Origin: Magallana gigas
Taxonomy: Eukaryota
DNA length: 64,000 nucleotides
Direction: 5' to 3'
Assembly: GCF_963853765.1 (NCBI RefSeq)
Contig: NC_088859.1
Location: 8,804,001 to 8,868,000, forward strand
Shown here: in pieces, positions 1 to 27,954 of the stretch
Numbering within the stretch: position 1 is the stretch's first letter
Layout: every line of letters starts with the position of its first letter
Made by a program: the position numbers and the translations under genes
The notes under the pieces: model-generated
What the model saw: the letters and a program-made list of their open reading frames with translations, nothing else
What the model was told of the DNA's origin: nothing
Database searches by the model: none

Positions 1-105
1 GAACTAGTTAATTTTCAAAACTCCAGAGCATGCATAAATATGTGCAGATTTACATGTACATGTATTGACATTTCAGTTTTCCGTGTACCGGTATCTTGAG
101 TTTTC

Positions 106-14100: not shown

Positions 14101-16470
14101 CTGACCACTCTGACATCTGTTTCTGAAATAAAGCGATAAAAAAACATGCAATTTTCTGTTTTACTGTTGATTTTGGCATTTGTTTTTGGTTTTAGTAATA
14201 TATTAGATATTTGAGGGCACCTTTCTGATAATTGATAAAACTGCCAATGCACCTCATTGTAATTTTTTGTCTTTTATATCTTTACAGATGAGTCTGATGG
14301 TTTACTCACAAAAGAGGTATATATTACGTACATTAAGAATAAACTGAAGTCCAAAACTAACAAATCTAAATGCATCCTTCCAAAAACTTGACATTTTTTC
14401 TTTAGGAGAAAACTTTGCTGCTCCAGAGATGTATGCTGTTTTATGCCCATGGTCGATTGGACGAGTTTTACCACGAATGTAAAGCCTTGTTGTTCAACAT
14501 GTTCAAGGATCTAAATGACCCAGACTTCATCAAGGGTGCGTACAACTGGAATGAATAGTCACTTTGATGATTGAACAATATTTTGATTTGATCTGAAAAG
14601 TGCACCTTTATATGCTATAATATACAAGCATATTCCAAATTATATGAAGAATGTTAGTTTTCATTTACATGTACATTTCTTGACTTAAATGCACTGATAA
14701 GAAATAATTCACTCTTTTGCAATTTACAGTAGTAGTTTCATGCAATAAAATAATGAATTTTTACTATTGAAAATAACACAAGAATTTTGACTTTCACAAA
14801 CATTAAACACAGCATTAACTATATGATGTATATTCATAGTTCGTTACCAATTGAAATACATGCATATGTATTGTTTTCTATGAATTTCAGCTGTATATTG
14901 CTGTAGATCTAATAAAACTAGGAGAGAAATGCTGCAGGACCATTTTAAACCTGGCTATAAAGGTATGATTAGAACTCAATTGAGGAATATCAATAGAGTT
15001 GTATTAGGACTAAAGATAATATTGAATGCACTAGAACATTGCTGTTTTACTGAATATCTTCATAGAAATAGAATTTTTTAAGTTTTTTTTTTTCTTTTAG
15101 TTGGAGATTCATCAAAGTCTGACATTCCAGTTGATGACTTATGGGATTTGTTTGTTAAGGTAAAACAGTGCATATTTTTTTTGCAAAATTGGGAAGCTTT
15201 GGTTTCAATATGTCATAATACAATGTAATAGATGTATCTCTTTACATGGTCAATAATTTACGAAATTTTATGCCCTATTTAGTATTCACCGTGGTAAAAA
15301 AAAAACTTTTTTAAGTACCGGTATTCATTGTTCAAAAGCGATGTTTCAAATTTTTGGAAATAATTTGAAACATAAACATTGGGAAATATAAAAGACTTTT
15401 GCATTTTATTATTGTTAAGGTTCAGTACTAGTTATCAGTACTGTGAATGATTTGTATAAAATGTGTCAGCATAAAAACAATTTCTGTACATTTATAGCTG
15501 TGTGAATTGTTGTTAAACAACAAGAAATATGACGATTTACTAGAAGTGACGGCCCTTAGTATGTCCTGTCCCTACTTCATGCTAGAGCCAAGGAAAGTCA
15601 AGGTAAATAAAATTGAAAAAATTACAGAAGATGTCATATCATTGAAATTAAACAATATTTTTTATGAATTATTGAATTGTTATATGTTATATTTCTGTAC
15701 AAATGACATATGAGAAAGTACAGGTCTTGGACTTAGCTTTATGAAAATATTATGTGTTTTTTAAAGTCTTTATCTAAAAACTTTTGTCTTCAACATTTTA
15801 TACTGTTGACTTTTAAGCAAGCTGAGTTTATGTGTCTGCTGGCCTGTATTCGATCAAAGAATGAACACTTTGCCTTCAGTCATATCAGAGAAATCTGTAT
15901 CAAGGTATGCTTAGAAAATATACAACACTTTACAGCATATCACAGTTATTAAGTCGGCCCAAATTGTGTTGTGTCTCATTTATTTTTTATTTCAAAATTT
16001 ACAGGAAGGGCACAAAAACCAAGCATGGAATTTACTGAACCAAGTATTATTGATTTCCACTGAAAACAGACATAGCAGATTTTGTCTTCGCTATCTACTA
16101 ACTGTGAGTGTTAGCTGTGTTATCTGTTTAATCTGATGCCTGTAATCTGTCACAGCACAGAGAGAAATGTGGGTTTTTTTACCCCTTAGATGTTGAATTT
16201 TCAGTTTCAAATTAAAAACTAAAATGTCAACATTTTTATATACTAATAGTTATATTCATTGTGGTGTATGTTGTTGAATCAACAATTATTGCTCAAATGT
16301 AAATTAAAATGCAATTATAATATTTATTTCATTTTCTGGTTCATTTTCAGAATCCTGATCATGCTCCTGTAGAGTTACTTAATGGGCATAATGCAACCAT
16401 ATCCGGAACCTACAAGTATGCACTAGGTAAGAGAGAAAGTGATATCTGGAATCTAATCGTCAATATGCTT

Positions 16471-16520
<50 letters not shown>

Positions 16521-18022
16521 TATGCACTTGGTAAGAAAGAGTGATATCTGGAACCTACAAGTATGATCTATGTTAGAGGGAAAGTGATATCTGGAACCTA
16601 CAAGTACACACTAGGCATGGGAAAAAGTGATGTCAAAAGCCTTTAAGTACATTCTAAATAAGGAAGAAAGTGTTATCTAGATTTCACAAATATGTTCATT
16701 TTAAAAGAGAAAAAAATGTTTAACCATATTTGATAGTATTTCCATTACTCATTATAAAAGCAGCATTTTGATTGCCTTGACGTAGACATTTTGTGACTGT
16801 AGGAGAGTATGTGGCAGTTCTCCGGACGTGTCCTGAGGACCCATTGGTCAATCTCTGTATAGGACTCACATTAATCCACCTGGCTGGCCAGAAGTATTCC
16901 TCTAAAAAGCATTCCCTCTTTGCTCAGGTGAGGTGCAGGTTTGATCTATATTTAAGTCTATTGATTTCATGTAGAAAATGGATGTTCGAAACAAAAAGAT
17001 CATGTTTTAAGTCTTGTGATTTTGATTTACATGTTTTACATGCTTTGCAGGGACTAACCTTTATATACTGATTTCATGTAGAAAATGGATGTTTGAAACA
17101 AATTGATCATGTTTTAAGTCTTGTGATTTGTATTTACATGTATTACATGTTTTTCAGGGACTAACCTTTATAAACAACTACATGGAACTTCGAGGGGAGT
17201 GTCAAGAGATATACTACAACTTGGGTCGAGCACTGCATCAGCTGGGTATGAATTTTGAGCCATCTTTTAAAAAAACTGTTTGTTTGCCCTCTGCTGACTC
17301 AATGTTTAAACTTTAGATTGGTAGGAAGTTAATTTTTGTTTTTTATGCAATAAAAAGATCTGCAAACAAGCAAAAACTTTGGTCAGATTGTTATTGATAA
17401 ATCTTGAGTCAGAGTTTTCTCAACAAATTGTCAGTTGGTACTTTTTGTAAGTCTGTCAAGATACTGCAAACTATCTATTTTCAAAAGGTGGCCTTTGATT
17501 TAATTAATTCTCACAGTTTAATTAGTTTAATTTATGTCTTTCTTTTATATAACAATAGTGCAGTTTTTGATGATCATTGATGGTGTTGTAATTGTCTGTA
17601 GGGCTGACCTATGCTGCCATCCATTACTACAAAAAAGGCCTGACATTTCCTCCAATCATCGAGGATGGAGAGGTCAGTATCTGCTATTGCTTTGTATATC
17701 AAATTAACACAGTGCAACTTGATTAAAATATTTCGTTTGCAGGAAAGAGGAATAGATTTTTGGGGCATGGTAAACTGCTTTATTGGTGAAAAAACACTTG
17801 CCAGTAATAACATTTTACAAATTGACATATCCTTTAGACCTCACACGATTAAGATTCCTTTGAGATAATTAAAGTACATGTAAACTTACTAGTAAATCAT
17901 TTTCCCATTAGAATCGGTTTGACCTGACGCACCAGTTGGCTTACAATCTGATGATTATCTACAAGTCCAGCGGCTCCGATGCCCTAGCCAGACATATCAT
18001 GAATCGATACTTGGTCATCTGA
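8175..18022 (+). CDS. GTF3C3: General transcription factor IIIC subunit 3 (TFIIIC102, TPR protein), ~957 aa
   Basis: 26 in-frame GT-AG exons: 8175-8315, 8939-9224, 9603-9824, 10002-10015, 10375-10489, 10713-10789, 10986-11100, 11388-11563, 11881-11968, 12198-12256, 12544-12656, 12930-13017, 13134-13280, 13629-13809, 14288-14316, 14406-14535, 14891-14962, 15101-15159, 15498-15602, 15818-15904, 16005-16103, 16351-16426, 16803-16927, 17158-17245, 17602-17672, 17912-18022. Family motifs YLTGKISFTEF, GLMGEANIKFAQG, PFQTLGLIYEDQGD, YYNLGRALHQLGL, LAYNLMIIYKSSG. Confidence 0.95.
8368..8545. repeat. Long imperfect palindrome (hairpin/MITE) in GTF3C3 intron 1
   Basis: Arms of about 70-85 nt (…TTTGAATTTCTATCAATAAGCCGCTAAATGTAGGAGAAGAGAAAGATATATATCCTATCTATATAAA and its near reverse complement) around a short loop. 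Confidence 0.9.
9041..9180 (+). repeat. Coding 45-bp tandem repeat (3 copies of QGPSGFQLVQAEEGG)
   Basis: Units start at 9041, 9086 and 9131, with a partial unit at 9176, all inside GTF3C3 exon 2. Confidence 0.95.
16406..16678 (+). repeat. Degenerate 43-bp tandem repeat derived from an exon/intron junction, interrupted by (AG)n at 16474-16514
   Basis: Unit GGAACCTACAAGTATGCACTAG|GTAAGAGAGAAAGTGATATCT recurs about 5 times; the first copy contains the true donor of GTF3C3 exon 22. Confidence 0.85.
16962..17172 (+). repeat. 107-bp tandem duplication including a 3' splice site
   Basis: Two near-identical copies ending CAG|GGACTAACCTTTATA, with acceptors at 17051 and 17158. Confidence 0.92.
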
Positions 18023-18501
18023 GGTAAAATGGACTCTTTTGCTAATGCCAATTTCTTTCTTTTTTTGGTATTTTTTAAAGATATAATATTTACATTCAGT
18101 GTATATTTCCCCTTATATTTAGTGTGGAAATCTGAGATGTTCAATTTCCCTTGAATCCACTTAGCCAATACATGTGCAATGAGCACAAATATAAACGTCA
18201 TCACACGTTTTGAATTATTGTAAGATTAAATGAAACGTTCAAACTTTCATAACTAACTTGATATGTACCAAGGGAAAATAATCGTTAAATCAAATCTATT
18301 CATCAGTAGAAAAAATTTTCGACAAAGTTTCAGACGCTATATTTATAGTTGGGGAAGCGAACTAAATAACATGTTAATATGGCTGTTCCATGTATGTTTC
18401 ATATCCCTGATTAAGAGCTTATATAATGGCTTTAAAGCAATGTCACACAAATATTTTATACAAATAGACATCAGTATGATTATAAATATAAGCATTGAAT
18501 G

Positions 18502-18590
18502 CCTATAACACACCAAGCGGTGCAGACAAATTGAATACTGCACATTAGCGTGGTATGATAATTTGTCTGCACCGCTTGTTGTGATATAGG
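18502..18590. repeat. Palindrome with ~30-bp arms in the GTF3C3 3'UTR intron
   Basis: TATAACACACCAAGCGGTGCAGACAAATT ... AATTTGTCTGCACCGCTTGTTGTGATATA. Confidence 0.85.
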
Positions 18591-20229
18591 GCCAACAACA
18601 TACATAGATAAGCATTCAATGCATAAATGAAGAATTTCCTGTAGCGGTAATCAAAATTTATTTATATTTCTGCTTGGTCTTTTGAGAATATAGTATCGCT
18701 GGAAGATTTTCTGAGGTCTAATAGTCTACATGTATATCATGAAGCTCTTTGAAATAATAATTTCAACCAATATCATGATTAAATTCAAGCAAACACACTT
18801 GTTAAGTTTTAATTATTTTCCAAGAAAATGAAGTACATGTACTAAAATATTCCTGTATAACTAGTGTATACATGAAAAAAAATAAATAGATTTAATATTT
18901 AGTCCACTATTATTGAATTGTAGTATTTTTTTGTAAATACACAGTGTAGTACATCTTATAACTTGTTTTGTTTCTTCTTAGGAAACCAACGACTGTTTTG
19001 AAAGAGAAGTTACCCACTGTAGTCAGTCTGTTTTGACTTGACTTAAAAAACTTACAGCATAGATGTACTTACCTTAAAATTATCAGTACACTTCACATGT
19101 GGCAGGGGAAAGATATTCTATGTGAAATTGGAGTGATGGAGCAAGTTTGGTAGACATAAATTACAGGTGTCTGACAAACACACATTGGTCTAGTCAGAGA
19201 CACTTAAGGATGTGCACTCACACTCTGCCAATAAGTCTGCAGGTGCTCTTATAGAGACCCCAGTGTCTATTTTACAGATTGCAGCCATAGAGTCTTGTGT
19301 CAGGGATTTAGTACCTCTGCCATACTTGGGGAATCAATACACTGCAGAATGTATGGGAAGAACAGTACACCCTGACTGAAAGAACATCTACAATGTGTGT
19401 GAAGACTTTGAAAACCTTCAGGCCATTTTTTGTTGATATTTTTTTTAATTGTATGTTTATGCCTAGAAAAGATGTTGGATCTAAAATTCTCTCATTTGTG
19501 ATGATTGATTATTTAGAAATGCAGTCTTTAGACAACTAGATGGAAGTCATTAAGATGATATTACATGTATTTACTATAAGAGAGATCAACTGAAAAAAGA
19601 AAATGATCATAAATATACATTGATTTATATTCACTGATAACAACAAACGTTGACCAAAACAGATCAGATAAAAATGGTCATTACACTAAGAGCAAAAAAA
19701 TAACCTGTGTACAATGTATTTGAATGCAATTTTTTGCCAAATAATCAATGGTTTTAAATATAAATACATTGACAATTATTAAACAGAAACTGTCTATATG
19801 CCTGCAAATTACAGCCTACATGTTTTCCCCTCTCCTGCCTGTAAGAAAGAGTGCGTGGTAGTGATTTTTTTGCCTAAATATTATTTTTCACAGAACCTTT
19901 GTTTATTCATCGCTGTTCCCTTGCCTTTTTCTTCTGATACCACATTAGGTCTGGGCACAATCTTGTGACTGTTATATTTGAAAGATTATTCACAAGTGGT
20001 AGCTCAGTAGCCTTATTGGTCGGTTTCGGCTGTAGAACTGTCATTTTACTTGCCATTGTCCGTCAACCTTCTTTAATGTCAATGTCGGTCGGGGGTCAGG
20101 GGGGCATGTCCTTTGAGTGAGTTGGTGGTTAATGCTCTTACTCTCAGAAACCCCCAAAATGCTTAGCAAAATGCAGCTTTAAAGAGGTGTACTTCATAAA
20201 TTTTGTCGTACCTGGAGTAACACTACTAG

Positions 20230-20537
20230 TATGGCACGCCAAATCCACAAAAATGAGATAAACATATTTCACATTTGATAAATGAAATTAAATTTATCGA
20301 TTTATCGATAAACCATGTTTTGCAATTGCAAATGGTTGTTTTTCAGTATTAATTATAGTTTAACACCTCTGAAACAACAATGGTCGCTTTAACTGTGGTT
20401 TACAGATGTGAAATATAGAATTTATAGATTATCATATTTAATTATATAATTTTATGTTCGTAAACTATAGTTTATCAACGTTAAATCTAGTTTATCGATC
20501 TTGAAACTATGATTAGCTCATTTTTGAGTGCCACATA
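20230..20537. mobile_element. Short copy of the TATGG-terminated, 6-bp-TSD element family (IS3EU-like MITE)
   Basis: Left end TATGGCACGCCAAATCCACAAAAATGAG; degenerate right end CTCATTTTTGAGTGCCACATA; flanks TACTAG / CACTAG; internal AACTATAGTT-type modules as in the 25707-27710 copy. Confidence 0.8.
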
Positions 20538-20619
20538 CACTAGCATTTACAAAGTAATAGGGGCTCGTCTCGGAGTCCGTGGAGTCAGAGACATAAAGTT
20601 ATTTAGTCTCTGGTAGGGT

Positions 20620-20820
20620 TTATGTGCGGATCTAAAGTGGGTTCCAGCGGGTTTGTAGCCCCCCTCCCCCCCCCCCCCCCCGAAAATTAAACTTCTTAAT
20701 TTTGCATAGTAAAATTACCGAAATATAATTACCGAAAATATGTCTATGACCCCCTCCCCCATTTAAGGAAAATTAAAGATCTTTCGCCCCCCCTTTCCGG
20801 AATTTTTTTTGGCGCATGGT
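20620..20820. repeat. Dispersed repeat fragment with poly-C tract (ATGTGCGGATCT...GGCGCATG type)
   Basis: Weak inverted ends and C-runs typical of a short interspersed element; family not assigned. Confidence 0.4.
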
Positions 20821-21246
20821 GTTATAAATGTGACGATAAAGAATTTCAACTTGATTTTAAATTAGACATTATTTGTGTTTATTTAAAATCTTTACTTCAG
20901 GCCAATATATATCGATTTGAGTTCATCACGGTACCATGTCGAGCGTATTTTGTATTTGTTTGTCACATTCTCAGCTAGTGTCGAAACACGCGCCAAGTCT
21001 AAAAGTCTCCGTATCTATCAGCATGCATGCAATGTAAAAAAGTTTTCTTGTGAACATCATAACCAACTTGGAAGAGAACATGATGGAAAGCGAATATTTT
21101 CCTCACTATGACTGGTATGTGTGATGCGCTATTTTCGTCGAGACATTTTATCGAAAAATTCGGCTGACCCCAGTATATGCCGTTGTTTAAATGGCTTTTT
21201 AAGTGGTCTGTTTATTAATATGCATAAAATGTTTTACGAGATAGAT

Positions 21247-21819
21247 CTAATAGCCCTTCATGATTCCATCCCGGGCAACATTTTTTTGTACGTATTCCTC
21301 TTTGTGACAATCCATAAATAATCCTCGACGAAATGGTGTATTTTCGAAAGTAATTGCACATAAAATATCCCACTCTTCCGATGCGGATTTCATAGAAACT
21401 AATCTACAGCCGAATAAATCCTTGTCGTTCCATAAAGAACTGGAATTGTGGCAAGATGAGCCTTTCTGGTATTGCTGTATTACTGGTCCTCCGATAAACT
21501 CTGTAGAAGAGATCGAGAGCATCACAGCAGCTAGATGGTTTTCTTTGTGGATGACTCCTTTGATGCAGCATTAATAAGAATTCATTTTTTTCAAATGTTC
21601 ACGTAATAGATCATATAAAAACTATAGGAACTGATTAAAAAGGGATAAATTTTTGGCGTTATCTCTGAAAGTAAACACCTGGAGACGATTCAACATCTTT
21701 TTTATATCTGTAGCAATGATTCGTCTTGCCGTATGGCGATTCACGCATGTAATTCTGTGAAGTTTATAATCATCTGTCATGTTGTAAATTTTGAATTTTC
21801 CGGGTGGCAGTAAATACAA
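21247..21819 (-). pseudogene. Decayed reading frame, possibly a Tc1/mariner-type transposase remnant
   Basis: ORF-track entries 21622-21819 and 21247-21525 share one frame and are separated by only two stops (~190 codons in total). Loose motif resemblance (RRIIATDIK, YQKGSSCH, FGCRLVS...W), but the spacing is shorter than expected. Confidence 0.3.
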
Positions 21820-23197
21820 AATGACACATCTCGCAAATTTTTAATTCTAACAGTTTACTAAGAAGAATAAATCAAGGTCTGCTACATTATCTAATGCCGA
21901 AATGTAGATTGATTATATACAATAACTAAACGCATAATTAATAAAGATTAGATATGATCGAGTTTTTTTGGACATCGATGTCGGAACTGAGACGCTGATA
22001 TTTTGTTTCTCTTTGAAATGCCTTGCCTCCCTACAGTGAGATGACCGATACAAAATCTTAAACGTGAACTCCAACATACTATCCCATGGCGTGCGTGTAA
22101 AGCTCTTGTAAACCGTACCGTACCATTGGCCCTGTCAAATCGATCATGGAGGAAGGGTGAAATTCACTTACAGTACTCCAAAAGATGGGAATAAAGATTT
22201 CTTTAACGTCGATAATTCCTCAAACAAAGTTGACGATATAAATAGAAAACCGTCTAATTCTGACGATTTTAAGTTTTCAAACATTCCAGCGATCCTGTGT
22301 TTGTGTGTGTTTGGAGCCACATCGCTTGCTGCATGATTGCAAACCTCGGTCTATTAACAAGAGGTCGCCCGATGGATCACTTAATGCTAAAAGGGGGAGT
22401 GCAGAAACTGTTAATGGGCTAGTATTCACAGGGTCTTCAGAGTCACGTTCGATTTGCTGTACTTGTTGGATATTGCTGGTCAGGTGACGTCCAACAAGCG
22501 CTTTGTTCGCCGTTGTGTAACTCGGCAGGGTGAGAACTCAGGCGCTGGTTGGCGTGGTCGGACGATGAATTGGCATCGCAATTAATTAGAGGGAAACGCG
22601 CTGAATCGATTAGAGAGATAATTGCGGATAGACCGTACGCAGATCTTCCCACAGGTTAATAGGAAACGGAAGGCTGCTCTTTTACGTAAGTTGTTATACT
22701 TGGCTATTAATTTTGCAAATGTTTAATTTCTCGAAGACTGCTTTTGGTTTTTTATTATTTAGTTAAAACATTAATAGTAATTTTTTTTATTCCAATATTT
22801 TATCACTGTCTGTCTTTGTCTCTGTTTCTTTCACCCATCTTCACATATTTTTTTCTAAATATAAATTAAATTCTATAAATATATATAAGTTACCAGCGTC
22901 TGGAATCTATGGCATTTAAAGCGCGCCAAAAATTTAGATCACAGCTTATAGATAATGCAGATATTCTTAATCGCCGGGAAAAACTGAATTAGTGAGTACT
23001 TTTTCTCTTAGATCAGGGGTAAGGTTATTGCTCTCGTCAATAAATCGGTCCATGGTTCACTACGAGAGGAATTGTTGATCAATATTGACAAACAAACATT
23101 TTTTTTTACAGGCCAGACCAAATCTCGAACGAATTTCCTTAAGATGAGGAAATCGAATCCATATTTACCATAGAAAAAGCCAACAAGTGGCCACAGC

Positions 23198-23578
23198 ATG
23201 TTAGCGCTGAATGCGAGCGAGAGTGGCTTAGCGGAACCATGTACCGTTACTGTGACCTCATCCGAGTCTAGCACGGTAGCAGAGGACTTTCAAAAAACCG
23301 ACAAAGAGGCTCTGTTTTATATAATAACTGTGCTGATGTTTTACGCTGTAAGCATTGTCACCCTTATGGTCAAATATCTACGGCAAGAGAAACAAGAAGC
23401 GGAGTACACCAATTACTATTATGAGTATGTGTCACGTGACAAGTTCCAGGACCCTCTCTACCAAAATTCCCTGAACGTGCAGCGAACGCTGAGCGCCGTG
23501 CGCGACAGTTATAATAAAGTCGTTCCAACAGACTGCATACCCCACACAAAGCAAGCTTTCTCGGAGACCAGCGTCTAG
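23198..23578 (+). CDS. 126-aa single-pass type I/III membrane protein, KCNE/MinK-like candidate
   Basis: Intronless ORF with an N-terminal sequon (NAS), one TM segment (ALFYIITVLMFYAVSIVTLMV), juxtamembrane KYLR, a YYEYV motif and C-terminal ETSV. A non-coding upstream exon is suggested by a donor at ~22686 (TAC|GTAAGT) and an acceptor at 23111. Confidence 0.8.
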   Translation: MLALNASESGLAEPCTVTVTSSESSTVAEDFQKTDKEALFYIITVLMFYAVSIVTLMVKYLRQEKQEAEYTNYYYEYVSRDKFQDPLYQNSLNVQRTLSAVRDSYNKVVPTDCIPHTKQAFSETSV

Positions 23579-24392
23579 CTATATAGTTATATCAAAACCG
23601 AACTCCTGGAAAACTTTTGCACCGTTGGGAGTAGGTAGTTCGATCTGTCCTGAAGTTCTTATTTCTTTATGATGAGATTTTATACCACACTGTTTACATA
23701 TGTCACAGAAACTTAGACTAAATAAAACATTCAGTGTTTTTACTTTTTAGAAATACCATATTATAGCCGTTATTGGGCTCGTTCTTGTCAGTGAAATTCT
23801 CTTGGCAAATGATTCAAGAAATGGGGTTTTGGAATTTGATTGACGAGAAAAATTGTATGCAAGGAAAGTTTCGCCCTGGTTTATATTCGTCCCGTCTTAT
23901 ATTTTTCCCTATATATTTTCGCTTTATTTACCCTCATTTTCATTTGGCAAATTTATCGATAATTACAATTGTGTTAAATTAATTTAAAACGGGCAGAAAT
24001 CTTAATTTTAAATAACTAAATAACTTTAGTGGTGAAAATAAAAGGGCGCAAATATAATCCTGTATATTCAGTAATAATCCAAAGGTTTGTACTTTCACAA
24101 TTTTTTAAATGTTCCCCAATTTATTTTGCAGAAGACATGATTGTTTGTTGAACTGTGATAGACATATGCTAACCAACAAGTATGTAGAGGTTAAAGAAGA
24201 AAGAGAGAGGGGGGAGAGAGATTTTTATTGACAATTTTTGATCGATAAGCAGACCCCTTCTAATTCTGACCATAATTGGAGTAGACATGTCGCCACAGAA
24301 AACCCACCACCGCCACCAAGCATGTAGCGTTGATTTATGGATCCAAGACCTCTAGTATTTACTTATACAAAAGATGATGCAGGAATCAATAG

Positions 24393-24397
<5 letters not shown>

Positions 24398-24438
<41 letters not shown>
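24398..24438. repeat. (AG)n microsatellite
   Basis: Pure dinucleotide run. Confidence 0.98.
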
Positions 24439-24442
<4 letters not shown>

Positions 24443-25696
24443 AATCAAGTTTTACAGATTGAAGAAAAACAAACGGGATAACATCATATCCAAATTAGTT
24501 TTGGAGGAAAACAGATTTTTCAATTCTTCCCCGGGCAAGCTGCATGGAAGAGTCATCAATCTTTGAGCGGAAATCAAACGAAAGGCCACACTAATATAAT
24601 TTCTTGTTCGTTAGACCCCGAGCGCTCATATTTAAATAAAACTTTACGAATAACATTATATATTATTAATTTCCCACATCCAGGAATTTCTGCGCTGTTT
24701 TCTGTTCTATTTCCGCTCTATTCTTGCATTTTTTTCAAAGCATATGTAGTTTTATTTTATAAATCAGAAACAAGTAGAGGAAATGTAACCGTCCGCTCAA
24801 ATTTACTTATGTACCGCCTAAAAATGTTTGCTACAAATTTTTATTTTTATTTTTTAATCGCTCGCCCGCTCGTTCTCTTTTTCACTGAATGTCGGTCAAG
24901 CAGATATGTGTGGCCAAAATGAAAAAAAATCTTTGGTGGAGACAAATAGAACCATTTTAACAAGACCTTGGAGTTTTGGTAGGATGTAACTATATCTTTT
25001 TTGCATCAAAGCTAGTTAAAAATGACGCTGGTTCCAAGAGAAATATGCAGAGATTGCGTAGTCTTAGCTCAAATGCCAGACAAATCTTGTTGCTTTCAAA
25101 GAGTTCTGGCTGCATGAGGAACAGGCAGGCCTACGCCACATTGCTGTTTGACACAACTACTCAAAGTTCTAGCTCTTTTTAAAATGGTTCTAATGTTCAA
25201 ATAAGCGATATAAGCGACAAATAAATCGGTAGCTGTTCTAGCCGAACGACCTGGAGTTGGAGAATAGCAAAAATATAGACTCTTCATACCGGTACTTGTA
25301 TGCAAGCCAAGAATTGAAAAGTTCGATGAAACATTAAATTTAATGCGAGAAATTAACTGCCTGCTTCAAAACAACTGATGTAGAACAAGCCAAATGATGT
25401 ATGATTTCGGGAAGGGGTACGTAATCATGTTTCTTTAGGACACGTTGCGAATGCAAGCATGGATCATGGATCTAAATACCTTTATAGAACCGTTTAAAAT
25501 GAGCTTGGACTTTGGGCAGTACGTGATCAACTCCGATTTGATGAAGGCGGGGTCTTCTTGTGGTTAACTGTCATTGGCTAATATATATGCATATATTGAA
25601 CGCAATGACACTCGTCCGACTTCATCCAGGGATGTATAATATACCGGTAATTCACTGAAACAGCGTCAGTTTCACACAGCAGAGCAGCGGCTTTGA

Positions 25697-27954
25697 TAGT
25701 CTTGTCTATGGCACGCCAAATTCACAAAAATGAGCTAAACATAGTTTCACAGTCGATAAACTAGGTTTATCGACTGTTAACTATAGTTTACGGATCGATA
25801 ATCTATGTTTCACATCTGTAAACTATAGTTAACACCGAAAACAATCATTTGCGGTTGTTAAACATAGTTTATCTGATAAATAGGGTTTTATGATCAGGAA
25901 ACCACGGTTTACAAATCTAAAGCACGCCAAATTCACATAAATTAGCAAAACATAGTTTCACAGTCGATAAACTAGGTTTATCAGCTGTTAACTATAGTTT
26001 ACGGATCCTAAACTATAGTTACAGACGTTAATCTATATTTCACATCTGTAAACTATAGTTTACGAATGTATATCTATGTTTTCTGTCTGGAAATACACGT
26101 TAACAATAGATTTTGCTGATAAATATAGATTCACATCTGTAAACTATAGTTTACATTCGTAAACTATAGTTTAGAATTGATAAATATAGTTTCACGATTG
26201 TGAAACTATATTTATCAGATAAACTATGTTTTACAATCGTTAATTATAGTTTTCGGTTCTAAACTATAGTTAACTGTCATTTATATTTATAAATTTAAAA
26301 GACATAAACTATAATTCACGATCCTACACTATAGTTTTGAGAGATGAACTATTATTTACGTTTGTTAATCATAGTTTATCGTCCTACCCCGACTATAATT
26401 GTCGTTCGTAAACAATAGTTTACGTATGTTAAACATAGTTTATGCGTATAAATGTGTGTTAACTATAGTTTTCAATTTAAAATCTCGAGTAACCAATCGT
26501 GAGAGGCGATACAAAATGTGCTCCATTGTAAAAATGGCTCTTCATAGGGAAGCACGTGCGAATTTGCCCTCCGTACAAAAAAAAGATCGTTACATTGTCA
26601 GTATGCCTAAATGTAAAAATTGATATATAGCCTACCCATATTTTCGCTGTTGCTGGCCATCGCGTCCCTCATCAGCTTCCGCCGTACAGTAAATACAATA
26701 AAAAAAAGCCAGCGTTTTTTGTTGTTGTTGTTTGTATTAATTTTTTTTAAATCAAAATAAAAAAGGTTAAGTTATTTTAATAATTTCACTTGCCATAAAG
26801 TTATCGAAAAATCACTTTTCTTGTCAAAAAGAAATATATATCATAACAACCAATGAAAATGGTCGTTGTTTAGGCAAAATCTTATCTTGCTGTAACTAGG
26901 ATTAACGTATCTATGATTTACGAACAAAACTCTAGTTAACTATAGATTCAATCGTAAACTATAGTTTAGGGTCGTAAAATATAGTTTCACAGAGAATTCC
27001 GCATGTCAGATACTAAATGAGAGATTCTGTTTGTAAACCATGCTTTACAAACGTAAAACTATGTTTATCACATTTTTGTGAATTTGGCGCCTTAATGTCT
27101 AAACAATACAATTTGCATTCGTGAACTATAGTTTAGAGTTGTTAATCATAGTTTCACAATGGTGAAACTATATTTATCAGATAAACTATGTTTAACAATC
27201 GCAAATGATTGTTTTCAGTGTTAACTATGGTTAACAGATGTGAAACATAGATTATCGCGTTAACTATAGTTTACAGACGTGAAATATAGATTAACGTCGT
27301 TAACTATAGTTTTCGATCCGTAAACTATAGTTAACCTAGTTTATCGACTGAGAAAATATGTTTAGCTCATTTTTGTGAATTTGTCTGATAAATGTAGTTT
27401 CACGATTTGTGAAACTATAATTAACAACGCTAAACTTTAGTTTACGATTGTAAATTATAGTTAACAAATGTGAATCTATATTTATCAGCAAAATCTATTG
27501 TTAACGTTTTTTACAGATAGATAAACTATGATTATCATTCGTAAACTATATAGTTTACATTCGTGAAATATAGTTTCACAGATGTAAACTATAGTTAGCG
27601 AATCGTTAACTATAGTTTAGGATCCGTAAACTATAGTTAACAGCTGATAAACCTAGTTTATCGACTGTGAAACTATGTTTAGCTCATTTTTGTGAATTTG
27701 GCGTGCCATACTTGTCCCATGATCACCTGCCCTAGGGGTGTATTCGTTTGGTCGATTGGAGAGCTGCAAGAGTAATCCTAATTTGCTCGTTTGCAGTATT
27801 GAGATCTCCAGTAGATCTCCATTGTCTACTTTTCAAATAGTAGGTAGACAATGGAGATCTACTGGAGATATTCAGGACCAGTTCTGGAGGTAGCAAGCGA
27901 ATACACCCGCTGCTCTTCGATTGGAGAGCAGCCCGGGATCATGGGACAAAACTA
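25697..27954. mobile_element. Small MITE (~250 bp when reconstructed) whose left TIR is split by a later insertion
   Basis: Reconstructed left TIR TAGTCTTGTCCCATGATC (25697-25700 + 27711-27724) versus right TIR GATCATGGGACAAAACTA (27937-27954), 17/18 match. Internal hairpin ATCTCCAGTAGATCTCCATTGTCTAC...GTAGACAATGGAGATCTACTGGAGAT. Confidence 0.75.
25707..27710. mobile_element. 2.0-kb non-autonomous foldback-like DNA transposon (IS3EU-like ends)
   Basis: First 65 nt identical to the reverse complement of the last 65 nt (TATGGCACGCCAAATTCACAAAAATGAGCTAAACATAGTTTCACAGTCGATAAACTAGGTTTATC); exact 6-bp TSD CTTGTC; arms of many AACTATAGTT modules around a unique core (~26450-26900); no transposase ORF. 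Confidence 0.92.

What the first reader, a model, noticed from the sequence alone, without database searches (positions are those of the whole stretch)
23198..23578. Candidate molluscan KCNE (MinK/MiRP)-like potassium-channel beta subunit
Seen in sequence: a 126-aa intronless ORF with an N-glycosylation sequon at N5 (LALNAS), one TM helix, then KYLR, then YYEYV about 11 residues later, ending in a class I PDZ-binding motif (ETSV). A non-coding first exon is suggested by splice signals. From recall, human KCNE3 YILFVMFLFAVTVGSLILGYTR aligns without gaps to YIITVLMFYAVSIVTLMVKYLR (8/22 identical, including the Y-x-R after the TM). KCNE3 YHVYI and KCNE1 FNVYI match YYEYV, and KCNE1 has EALY where this protein has EALFY. 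The size and the single coding exon behind a non-coding exon also match KCNE genes. KCNEs are generally treated as vertebrate genes, with divergent MPS proteins in nematodes. A lophotrochozoan member would point to an unrecognised Kv/KCNQ/ERG accessory-subunit system in molluscs (inference).
Basis: partly seen in the sequence, partly recalled or inferred. Interest (0 to 1): 0.85.

Follow-up and report, generated by a model that had tools for sequence, protein, structure and literature searches.

The report
Oyster KCNE-like channel subunit gene
An expressed, strongly conserved oyster gene encodes a small single-pass membrane protein that belongs to a large, unnamed family in molluscs, annelids, nemerteans and arthropods and looks like a distant relative of the vertebrate KCNE potassium-channel helper subunits, which the field currently believes are absent from invertebrates.

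Summary
The 126-aa ORF at 23198-23578(+) is real. It is transcribed and spliced (non-coding exon 1 ending at 22685, GT..AG intron, exon 2 from 23112) and is under purifying selection (dN/dS about 0.11).

The KCNE reading is largely supported at the sequence level:
- Pfam ISK_Channel is the top hit (E 2.2e-4; 21.4 bits against a cut-off of 22.1).
- 71 of 104 relatives hit the same model at E<=0.01 (best 3.5e-8). Eight of 20 relatives scanned singly pass Pfam's own threshold.
- Family profiles searched against all PDB sequences return essentially only KCNE1 and KCNE3 (best E 5.7e-4).
- The sub-family that hits KCNE3 best is tied to the oyster sub-family at hhalign E 2.4e-22.

The family has at least 431 clusters at 50% identity. 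Named members come from Mollusca, Annelida, Nemertea and Arthropoda, and every one is labelled hypothetical or uncharacterized. Papers from 2024 and 2026 state that no kcne genes are known in invertebrates.

Two features differ from vertebrate KCNEs: a very strongly conserved TM and juxtamembrane helix, and a C-terminal class-I PDZ ligand (58% of members).

Channel binding is not tested. I rate common ancestry with KCNE at about 0.8 and a channel-auxiliary function at about 0.6.

The parts
22138..22685 (+). Exon 1, non-coding 5' UTR. The 5' end is uncertain: RNA contigs begin at 22138 and at 22375. It carries short uORFs.
   Evidence: Spliced RNA contigs X12 (22138-22683/5) and X1 (22375-22685). 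Stranded reads have the first mate on '-', so the RNA is on '+'. There are 8 uATGs from 22138, or 4 from 22375. The 4 from 22375 were translated and all stop before the main ATG.
22686..23111 (+). Intron, 426 nt, GTAAGT...polypyrimidine tract-CAG
   Evidence: Joint 22685->23112 'skips 426, GT..AG' in 2 contigs and 8 raw read pairs. Depth is 0-0.11 in bins 22704-23091 against 5.6-7.2 in the flanking exon bins of X23. Sequence.
23112..23750 (+). Exon 2: the last 86 nt of the 5' UTR, the whole CDS and the 3' UTR
   Evidence: RNA contigs cover 23112-23738 and 23112-23750.
23198..23578 (+). Complete coding sequence, 126 aa plus stop, uninterrupted
   Evidence: In-frame TAG at 23171-23173 upstream. 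dN/dS 0.106 against an orthologue.
23210..23218 (+). N-glycosylation sequon N5-A-S in the predicted extracellular N-terminus
   Evidence: The sequon is kept in close relatives (LN[AST]S). 145 of 156 family members have at least one sequon N-terminal of the TM.
23309..23371 (+). Transmembrane helix, residues 38-58 (ALFYIITVLMFYAVSIVTLMV). Y41, V45 and Y49 are invariant in 104 sequences.
   Evidence: Conservation is helically periodic (96 degrees; 0 of 5000 shuffles reach it). AF2 pLDDT is about 95 here. The segment aligns to the KCNE1/2/3 TM.
23372..23449 (+). Conserved cytoplasmic juxtamembrane helix, residues 59-84 (KYLRQEKQEAEYTNYYYEYVSRDKFQ). Basic start, then the family motif YY-x-E-[FY]-V-x-R.
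   Evidence: Column conservation. AF2 predicts one continuous helix from 27 to 84. The segment aligns to the post-TM Y-I-R-S-K-K region of KCNE1.
23564..23575 (+). C-terminal E-T-S-V, a class I PDZ-binding motif
   Evidence: 96 of 165 family members end in x-[ST]-x-[VILF]. ETSV is the commonest ending, with 18 members.
23721..23726 (+). AATAAA polyadenylation signal
   Evidence: Sequence. RNA contigs end 12-24 nt downstream, at 23738 and 23750.

Best explanation
This is a two-exon, protein-coding oyster gene. Its product is a type-III single-pass membrane protein: N-glycosylated N-terminus outside, no signal peptide, C-terminus inside. It is a distant homologue of the vertebrate KCNE (MinK/MiRP) subunits. 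It belongs to an unnamed, strongly conserved family found across protostomes (molluscs, annelids, nemerteans, arthropods).

Shown here: the gene is expressed, spliced and under purifying selection, and it has profile-level similarity to KCNE.

Inferred mechanism: the transmembrane helix has a conserved stripe that includes the positions aligned to the KCNE3 residues facing S1 of KCNQ1. That helix packs against the voltage-sensor and pore periphery of a voltage-gated K+ channel (KCNQ, or possibly an ERG- or Shal-type channel) and tunes its gating or trafficking. The basic start of the juxtamembrane helix sits at the inner leaflet. The C-terminal E-T-x-V tail ties the complex to a Dlg/PSD-95-type PDZ scaffold.
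For: The ORF is real and expressed. A GT..AG splice joins 22685 to 23112, stranded reads show RNA on '+', the intron is empty, and 20 runs from 15 studies hold the stretch. Purifying selection: dN/dS 0.106.

KCNE similarity:
- Pfam ISK_Channel is the top hit at E 2.2e-4.
- 16 of 17 close relatives hit it at E<=1, and 71 of 104 broad relatives hit it at E<=0.01, with a best E of 3.5e-8.
- 8 of 20 relatives scanned singly exceed the gathering score: P0224 30.5, P0080 25.9, P0220 25.2, P0221 25.1, P0122 24.9, P0143 24.2, P0150 23.2, and Babylonia P0098 22.9.
- With the single sequence against PDB, 7 of 8 hits are KCNE1/2/3.
- With profile A2, all 7 hits are KCNE3 or KCNE1.
- With profile A3, the four best hits are KCNE3 at E 5.7e-4 to 4.6e-3, and the alignment covers the extracellular helix as well as the TM.
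- A1 against A3 by hhalign gives 99.5% probability and E 2.4e-22.
- ESM feature neighbours are KCNE clusters at 0.93-0.94.

Architecture: an N-terminal sequon in 145 of 156 members, a PDZ ligand in 96 of 165, and a long TM-plus-cytoplasmic helix with disordered ends. Conservation in the TM is periodic along one helical face. KCNE3 residues S57/I61/M65/A69/G73/I76 face KCNQ1 S1 (PMC9671499). They align to A38/I42/L46/A50/V54/M57, which are all conserved columns.
Against: The window protein scores 0.7 bit below Pfam's cut-off. The best direct E-values to solved KCNEs are only 0.016-0.065, or 5.7e-4 through a sub-family. Most of the score comes from about 45 residues around one TM helix, where convergence is hardest to exclude. 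The D-P motif after the TM of KCNE1-3 is absent. Four divergent sub-families (P0254, P0255, P0205, P0190/P0195) do not hit ISK_Channel at all. The S1-facing columns are only modestly more conserved than other TM columns (3.6 against 2.9 bits). I could obtain no alignment of vertebrate KCNEs, so no profile-profile comparison with them was run. There is no evidence on any partner channel.
Confidence: 0.6

Rival explanations
1. It is a true KCNE homologue whose main partner is not a voltage-gated K+ channel. The family would be a PDZ-anchored single-pass auxiliary or trafficking subunit for another membrane protein, such as an HCN, Ca2+ or Cl- channel, a transporter or a receptor. K+-channel partnership would then be a vertebrate specialisation.
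For: The homology evidence is the same as above. The PDZ ligand and the YY-x-EFV-x-R juxtamembrane motif are family-specific and absent from the aligned KCNE1-3 sequences. [quoted passage not shown] Vertebrate KCNEs are already reported to act on HCN channels (PMC6591248 title and abstract, seen).
Against: The best-conserved part is the TM helix, which is the channel-binding element of the KCNEs. The columns aligned to the KCNE3 residues that contact S1 are all conserved (PMC9671499).
Confidence: 0.2
2. It is an unrelated family of small single-pass proteins that converged on KCNE-like sequence features: an aromatic-rich TM, a basic juxtamembrane stretch and an N-terminal sequon. The Pfam and PDB matches would then be marginal false positives.
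For: Scores sit near the threshold (21.4 against 22.1 bits; PDB E 0.016-0.065). Other TM families (COX2_TM, CrgA, COX6C) appear at E 0.01-0.07. Some sub-families give no ISK_Channel hit. Foldseek finds nothing, as expected for a single helix.
Against: KCNE is the only family recurring across 71 of 104 members, and the best E of 3.5e-8 is far beyond the competitors. PDB hit lists are almost purely KCNE out of 177,635 sequences. The 14-residue stretch at the outer TM boundary is 9/14 identical between KCNE3 and sub-family A3 (NsYMYILFVMFLFA against NAYMYILFVLTFYA), and the match extends into the extracellular helix. The HMMER bias terms are 0.0-0.4.
Confidence: 0.15
3. It is a chance ORF in a non-coding transcript.
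For: The 5' UTR is long and holds several uATGs.
Against: There are 431 homologous clusters across four phyla. Core residues are invariant, dN/dS is 0.106, and both the start-proximal sequon and the C-terminal motif are conserved.
Confidence: 0.01

Closest known systems
Vertebrate KCNE family (KCNE1-5, KCNE6, lamprey KCNE0; Pfam PF02060 ISK_Channel)
   Same: Small single-pass protein with a glycosylated N-terminus outside and no signal peptide. The TM helix runs on into a cytoplasmic helix. A Y-x-R basic stretch follows the TM directly. The whole CDS lies in one exon behind a non-coding exon. It is the top Pfam match and gives an almost exclusive reverse match in PDB. The 'triplet' position (FTL in KCNE1, TVG in KCNE3; PMC11659587) aligns to S52-I53-V54.
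   Different: Sequence identity is low (8/22 in the TM against KCNE3). The D-P motif after the TM is missing. Conservation of the TM and a 25-residue juxtamembrane helix across phyla is much stronger. The family has its own YY-x-E-[FY]-V-x-R motif. Most members carry a C-terminal class-I PDZ ligand (E-T-x-V), which the aligned vertebrate KCNEs do not show. From memory, human KCNE1-5 do not end in such a motif. The family occurs in protostomes, where the literature says no kcne genes exist (PMC11659587, PMC13516689). Function is untested.
Caenorhabditis elegans MPS-1 to MPS-4 (MiRP/KCNE-related subunits of KVS-1 and KHT-1)
   Same: These are invertebrate single-pass proteins described as KCNE-like, with the N-terminus out and the C-terminus in. 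Their TM is sufficient for channel assembly, and they modulate Kv channels in neurons (PMC4210162).
   Different: A 2026 paper regards MPS proteins as nematode-specific and only 'sometimes described as' KCNE-like (PMC13516689). MPS-1 is 256 aa with a long disordered tail. I had no MPS sequence to compare, so whether MPS proteins belong to this protostome family is not tested. No named nematode member turned up among the labelled hits.
PDZ-anchored single-pass auxiliary subunits of other channels (for example Shisa/CKAMP proteins of AMPA receptors; recalled from memory, not tested)
   Same: One TM helix that binds the channel, plus a cytoplasmic tail ending in a class-I PDZ ligand that couples the complex to a PSD-95/Dlg scaffold.
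   Different: There is no sequence relationship and no cysteine-rich ectodomain here. This is only an analogy for how the C-terminal motif may be used.

Membership tests
KCNE (Pfam PF02060 ISK_Channel) | Sequence match to the curated family profile at or above its gathering score (22.1 bits) | tested here: inconclusive
   The window protein scores 21.4 bits at E 2.2e-4. It is the top hit but 0.7 bit short. Eight of 20 relatives scanned singly pass, at 22.9-30.5 bits. 71 of 104 reach E<=0.01, with a best of 3.5e-8. Those relatives are tied to the window protein at E 1e-16 to 1e-60 and at hhalign E 2.4e-22.
KCNE (Pfam PF02060 ISK_Channel) | Reciprocity: a profile of the candidate family recovers KCNE proteins specifically | tested here: met
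   With profile A2 against 177,635 PDB sequences, all 7 hits are KCNE3 or KCNE1, best E 0.016. With profile A3, the four best hits are KCNE3 at E 5.7e-4 to 4.6e-3. With the single sequence, 7 of 8 hits are KCNE1/2/3.
KCNE (Pfam PF02060 ISK_Channel) | Single-pass topology with an extracellular, N-glycosylated N-terminus and no cleavable signal peptide; about 100-180 aa | tested here: met
   The protein is 126 aa with a hydrophilic N-terminus, sequon N5-A-S, one hydrophobic helix at 38-58 and a basic C-flank K59/R62/K65. 145 of 156 relatives have a sequon N-terminal of the TM. This is sequence-level prediction only. Glycosylation was not measured.
KCNE (Pfam PF02060 ISK_Channel) | Juxtamembrane Y-x-R-[S]-[KR]-[KR] stretch directly after the TM helix | tested here: met
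   K-Y-L-R-Q-E-K aligns to S-Y-I-R-S-K-K of KCNE1 and to G-Y-T-R-S-R-K of KCNE3. Y60 is 98% conserved and R62 70% conserved in the family.
KCNE (Pfam PF02060 ISK_Channel) | Post-TM N-D-P-[FY] motif of KCNE1-3 (D76/P77 in KCNE1) | tested here: not met
   The aligned residues are T-N-Y-Y. From memory, this motif is also missing in KCNE4 and KCNE5, so it defines a sub-group rather than the whole family.
KCNE (Pfam PF02060 ISK_Channel) | Entire coding sequence in one exon downstream of non-coding exon(s) | tested here: met
   RNA joint 22685->23112; CDS 23198-23578 is uninterrupted. P0080 was shown directly to be one ORF (131 aa) in a 1.4-Mb genomic contig, and other relatives lie on contigs of up to 4 Mb. 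That vertebrate KCNE genes share this layout is from general knowledge.
KCNE (Pfam PF02060 ISK_Channel) | Physical assembly with a voltage-gated K+ channel alpha subunit and modulation of its gating | not testable with these tools
   This needs co-expression electrophysiology or biochemistry. The only indirect evidence is a conserved, helically periodic TM face that overlaps the columns aligned to the S1-facing residues of KCNE3 (PMC9671499).
Nematode MPS (MPS-1..4) | Sequence relationship to C. elegans MPS proteins | not tested
   No tool supplied an MPS sequence. The literature describes MPS proteins only as KCNE-like and nematode-specific (PMC4210162, PMC13516689).

The most novel reading that the evidence does not exclude
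KCNE-type auxiliary subunits are not a vertebrate invention. They date back at least to the protostome-deuterostome ancestor. A conserved, PDZ-anchored KCNE clade persists across molluscs, annelids, nemerteans and arthropods, unannotated and unstudied, and modulates invertebrate Kv (KCNQ-type) channels.
Probability: 0.5. Interest if true: 0.85.

Novelty: new variant of a known kind. Interest (0 to 1): 0.72.

Why it matters
[quoted passage not shown] A conserved protostome family that matches the KCNE profile would move the origin of this class of channel regulators back by more than 100 million years. It would supply candidate beta subunits for invertebrate KCNQ, ERG and Shal currents that are currently modelled as alpha subunits alone, including in classic molluscan neurophysiology preparations and in insects. 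The very strong conservation of the TM helix gives a natural data set for working out which KCNE-channel contacts are ancestral. The PDZ tail suggests a scaffolded mode of use that vertebrate KCNEs lack. The question can be tested directly with standard oocyte co-expression.

Tried and rejected
1. I tried to obtain vertebrate KCNE sequences as session objects for a profile-profile (hhalign) test and a joint tree. The word-indexed searches with profile A2 and with P0143 returned only family members (one search was a parameter error). The one exhaustive search lists only its best 150, all of them family members. That test was therefore not run.
2. Foldseek of the AF2 model against PDB gave no match. 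A lone helix with disordered ends (mean pLDDT 64) is not searchable by fold, so this result is uninformative.
3. The narrow bivalve profile A1 against PDB gave herpesvirus gO above KCNE2 (E 0.012 against 0.2). I take this as a chance match to the low-complexity juxtamembrane and tail region. It disappears with the broader profiles.
4. Organism names: the look-up of encoding contigs gave only sample codes. Names came from cluster look-ups for a minority of members. One label, 'archaellum biogenesis protein FlaJ' for P0193, is an evident mis-annotation of a 100-aa eukaryote-like family member.
5. There are no paralogues in the window: all 284 tblastn hits of the family proteins fall on this ORF.
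6. Rfam finds no RNA family in 19000-26500.
7. I compared conservation of the six columns aligned to the S1-facing KCNE3 residues with the other TM columns (3.6 against 2.9 bits). The result is suggestive but not decisive, so I do not use it as proof.

Full report
OBSERVATION. The window holds an ATG-initiated ORF of 126 codons at 23198..23578 on the + strand. An in-frame TAG lies at 23171-23173, so the first ATG is the start.
- sequon N5-A-S;
- a hydrophilic N-terminus without a signal-peptide core;
- one hydrophobic helix at about residues 38-58;
- K59-Y-L-R62;
- Y74-Y-E-Y-V78, eleven residues after R62;
- C-terminal E-T-S-V.

The KCNE3 sequence printed by HMMER confirms 8/22 identities in the ungapped TM comparison. 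KCNE1 'EA-LY' does align to 'EALFY'.

THE GENE IS REAL AND EXPRESSED. Twenty public runs from 15 studies hold the exon. I laid two RNA assemblies and two poly(A) stranded raw-read runs on 19600-25400. Spliced contigs cover 22138-22685 joined to 23112-23750, and 22375-22685 joined to 23112-23738. The joint skips 426 nt with GT..AG ends (GTAAGT donor, T-rich tract plus CAG acceptor), and eight raw read pairs also carry it. Depth is about zero in the intron bins and 5.6-7.2 in the flanking exon bins of run X23. All reads over the exons have the first mate on '-', which means RNA on '+' for the usual stranded library. The contigs end 12-24 nt after an AATAAA at 23721-23726.

The 5' UTR is long and contains short uORFs (8 uATGs from 22138, 4 from 22375). 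The transcription start is not fixed.

Against an orthologue with 74% protein identity (L003), dN/dS is 0.106 with dS about 1.3. Residues 36-69 are identical although synonymous sites are near saturation, and the few changes further on up to residue 92 are conservative Y/F swaps.

A LARGE UNNAMED FAMILY. A word-indexed search found 20 relatives. Their alignment A1 has an invariant core running from the TM through a juxtamembrane helix. An exhaustive profile search of 1.84 billion representatives gave 431 clusters (at 50% identity) at E<=1e-3 and 148 at E<=1e-10.

In a 104-sequence alignment (A2), conservation is concentrated in residues 37-83. Y41, V45 and Y49 are invariant. A38, I42, L56, Y60, E64 and R80 are at least 90% conserved. 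Within the TM the conservation is helically periodic: the best angle is 96 degrees and 0 of 5000 shuffles reach the observed power. Over residues 38-84 the period is 3.5 (p=0.005). One face of a long helix is therefore under constraint, which is the usual signature of specific helix-helix packing.

AlphaFold2 predicts one continuous helix over residues 27-84 (pLDDT about 95 in the TM), a second helix over 86-106, and disordered ends. Of 156 members with a recognisable core, 145 have an N-x-S/T sequon N-terminal of the TM. Of 165 members, 96 end in x-[ST]-x-[VILF], mostly E-T-x-V. The chance expectation is a few per cent.

Members that carry a source name come from these taxa:
- Mollusca: Mytilus galloprovincialis, Mizuhopecten yessoensis, Babylonia areolata and Plakobranchus ocellatus.
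- Annelida: Owenia fusiformis.
- Nemertea: Tubulanus polymorphus.
- Arthropoda: Periplaneta americana, Lepeophtheirus salmonis and Amphibalanus amphitrite.

Every one is labelled hypothetical, unnamed or uncharacterized.

IS IT KCNE? Forward test. Pfam ISK_Channel (PF02060) is the best family for the window protein: E 2.2e-4 and 21.4 bits against a curated cut-off of 22.1, with residues 21-85 on model positions 25-89. It matches 16 of 17 close relatives at E<=1 and 71 of 104 broad relatives at E<=0.01, with a best E of 3.5e-8. No other family matches more than 4 members. Of 20 relatives scanned one by one, eight exceed the gathering score at 22.9-30.5 bits, including the gastropod Babylonia protein.

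Reverse test. The single sequence against all PDB sequences gives KCNE2, KCNE1 and KCNE3 as 7 of 8 hits. Profile A2 gives seven hits, all KCNE3 or KCNE1. Profile A3 represents a sub-family reading NAYMYILFVLTFYAFSIVVLMVKYIRREREGSKLEFYYNEFVKRDW. It gives KCNE3 as its four best hits at E 5.7e-4 to 4.6e-3. That alignment covers the extracellular amphipathic helix with its sequon as well as the outer half of the TM, and 9 of 14 residues are identical at the TM entry. A3 is linked to the oyster sub-family A1 by hhalign at 99.5% probability and E 2.4e-22. The protein-language-model neighbours are KCNE clusters at 0.93-0.94.

Together this is a consistent, two-way, transitive case for homology.

The weak points are these:
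- The scores are modest.
- The similarity is carried by about 45-65 residues around one TM helix.
- The N-D-P motif of KCNE1-3 is not present.
- Four peripheral sub-families give no ISK_Channel hit.
- I could not obtain vertebrate KCNE sequences as session objects, so I ran no profile-profile comparison with them.

I put common ancestry with KCNE at about 0.8.

HOW IT PROBABLY WORKS (inference). In the KCNQ1-KCNE3 structure, KCNE3 residues S57, I61, M65, A69, G73 and I76 line the S1 helix of the voltage sensor, and their side-chain volumes are tuned for modulation (PMC9671499). Through the HMMER alignment, these map to oyster A38, I42, L46, A50, V54 and M57. All are conserved columns, averaging 3.6 bits against 2.9 for the other TM columns. 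That is suggestive but not decisive. The invariant Y41, V45 and Y49 lie on the adjoining face. The 'triplet' position (FTL in KCNE1, TVG in KCNE3; PMC11659587) corresponds to S52-I53-V54.

The most likely mechanism is that the TM helix docks in the groove between a Kv voltage sensor and the neighbouring pore domain and alters gating or surface expression. The basic K59/R62/K65 stretch would sit at the inner leaflet. The E-T-S-V tail would recruit a Dlg/PSD-95-type PDZ scaffold. Which alpha subunit is the partner (KCNQ, ERG, Shal or another) is unknown.

The rivals are:
- a true homologue that has a different partner (0.2);
- convergence (0.15);
- a chance ORF (excluded by conservation).

WHAT IS KNOWN. 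The literature I could search has no report of a molluscan, annelid or arthropod KCNE. [quoted passage not shown] A 2026 paper presents lamprey KCNE0 as the earliest-diverging member and calls the C. elegans MPS proteins nematode-specific and only sometimes described as KCNE-like (PMC13516689). Ciona has no KCNE gene (PMC3206303).

Some family members already carry a precomputed PF02060 hit in sequence databases, so automated pipelines have brushed against this. None is named accordingly, and no paper I could search describes the family. Relative to vertebrate KCNEs, the family differs in its PDZ ligand, its own juxtamembrane motif and its unusually strong conservation. I therefore class it as a new variant of a known kind rather than simply a further member.

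VERDICT. Interest is 0.72. The finding contradicts a current statement in the field and makes the origin of KCNE-type regulation directly testable, but it rests on near-threshold similarity of a short membrane protein.

LIMITS. Most family members have no organism label. No tissue information was available because run identities are coded. No complex prediction tool was available.

Noticed in passing
window 24947-25192: A roughly 246-bp element bounded by 36-nt terminal inverted repeats (81% complementary, 174 nt apart). RNA-contig word depth over it is 190-870 and many reads run off into unrelated sequence. It looks like a high-copy MITE that is transcribed from many loci.
   Followed up: partly
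window 21775-21822: A 48-nt segment with much higher read depth than its surroundings. It has dozens of loose ends on both sides and 'opposite strands' or 'goes back' joints in the raw reads. It is probably a fragment of a dispersed repeat or a foldback element rather than part of this gene.
   Followed up: no
window about 16460-19987: A 3.3-kb RNA contig ends at 19756, and stranded reads (first mate on '-') continue to about 19987. This looks like the 3' end of an upstream gene on the + strand. No read joins it to the KCNE-like gene.
   Followed up: no
window 22138-22685 (exon 1): The 5' UTR is unusually long (397-634 nt after splicing) and carries 4-8 upstream ATGs. The four from 22375 open very short uORFs. 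Translation of this small membrane protein may be regulated, or the true start site may lie further downstream. A TATAAATA box lies at about 22238.
   Followed up: partly
protein P0193 (family member, 100 aa): One source labels this eukaryote-type family member 'archaellum biogenesis protein FlaJ (TadC family)'. This is an evident mis-annotation of a contig in a metagenome.
   Followed up: no
proteins P0066 (871 aa, Plakobranchus), P0069 (647 aa), P0071 (715 aa), P0087 (606 aa): Some gastropod-type members have the same N-terminal module (ectodomain, TM, juxtamembrane helix) followed by several hundred extra cytoplasmic residues. These may be long isoforms or fused gene models.
   Followed up: no
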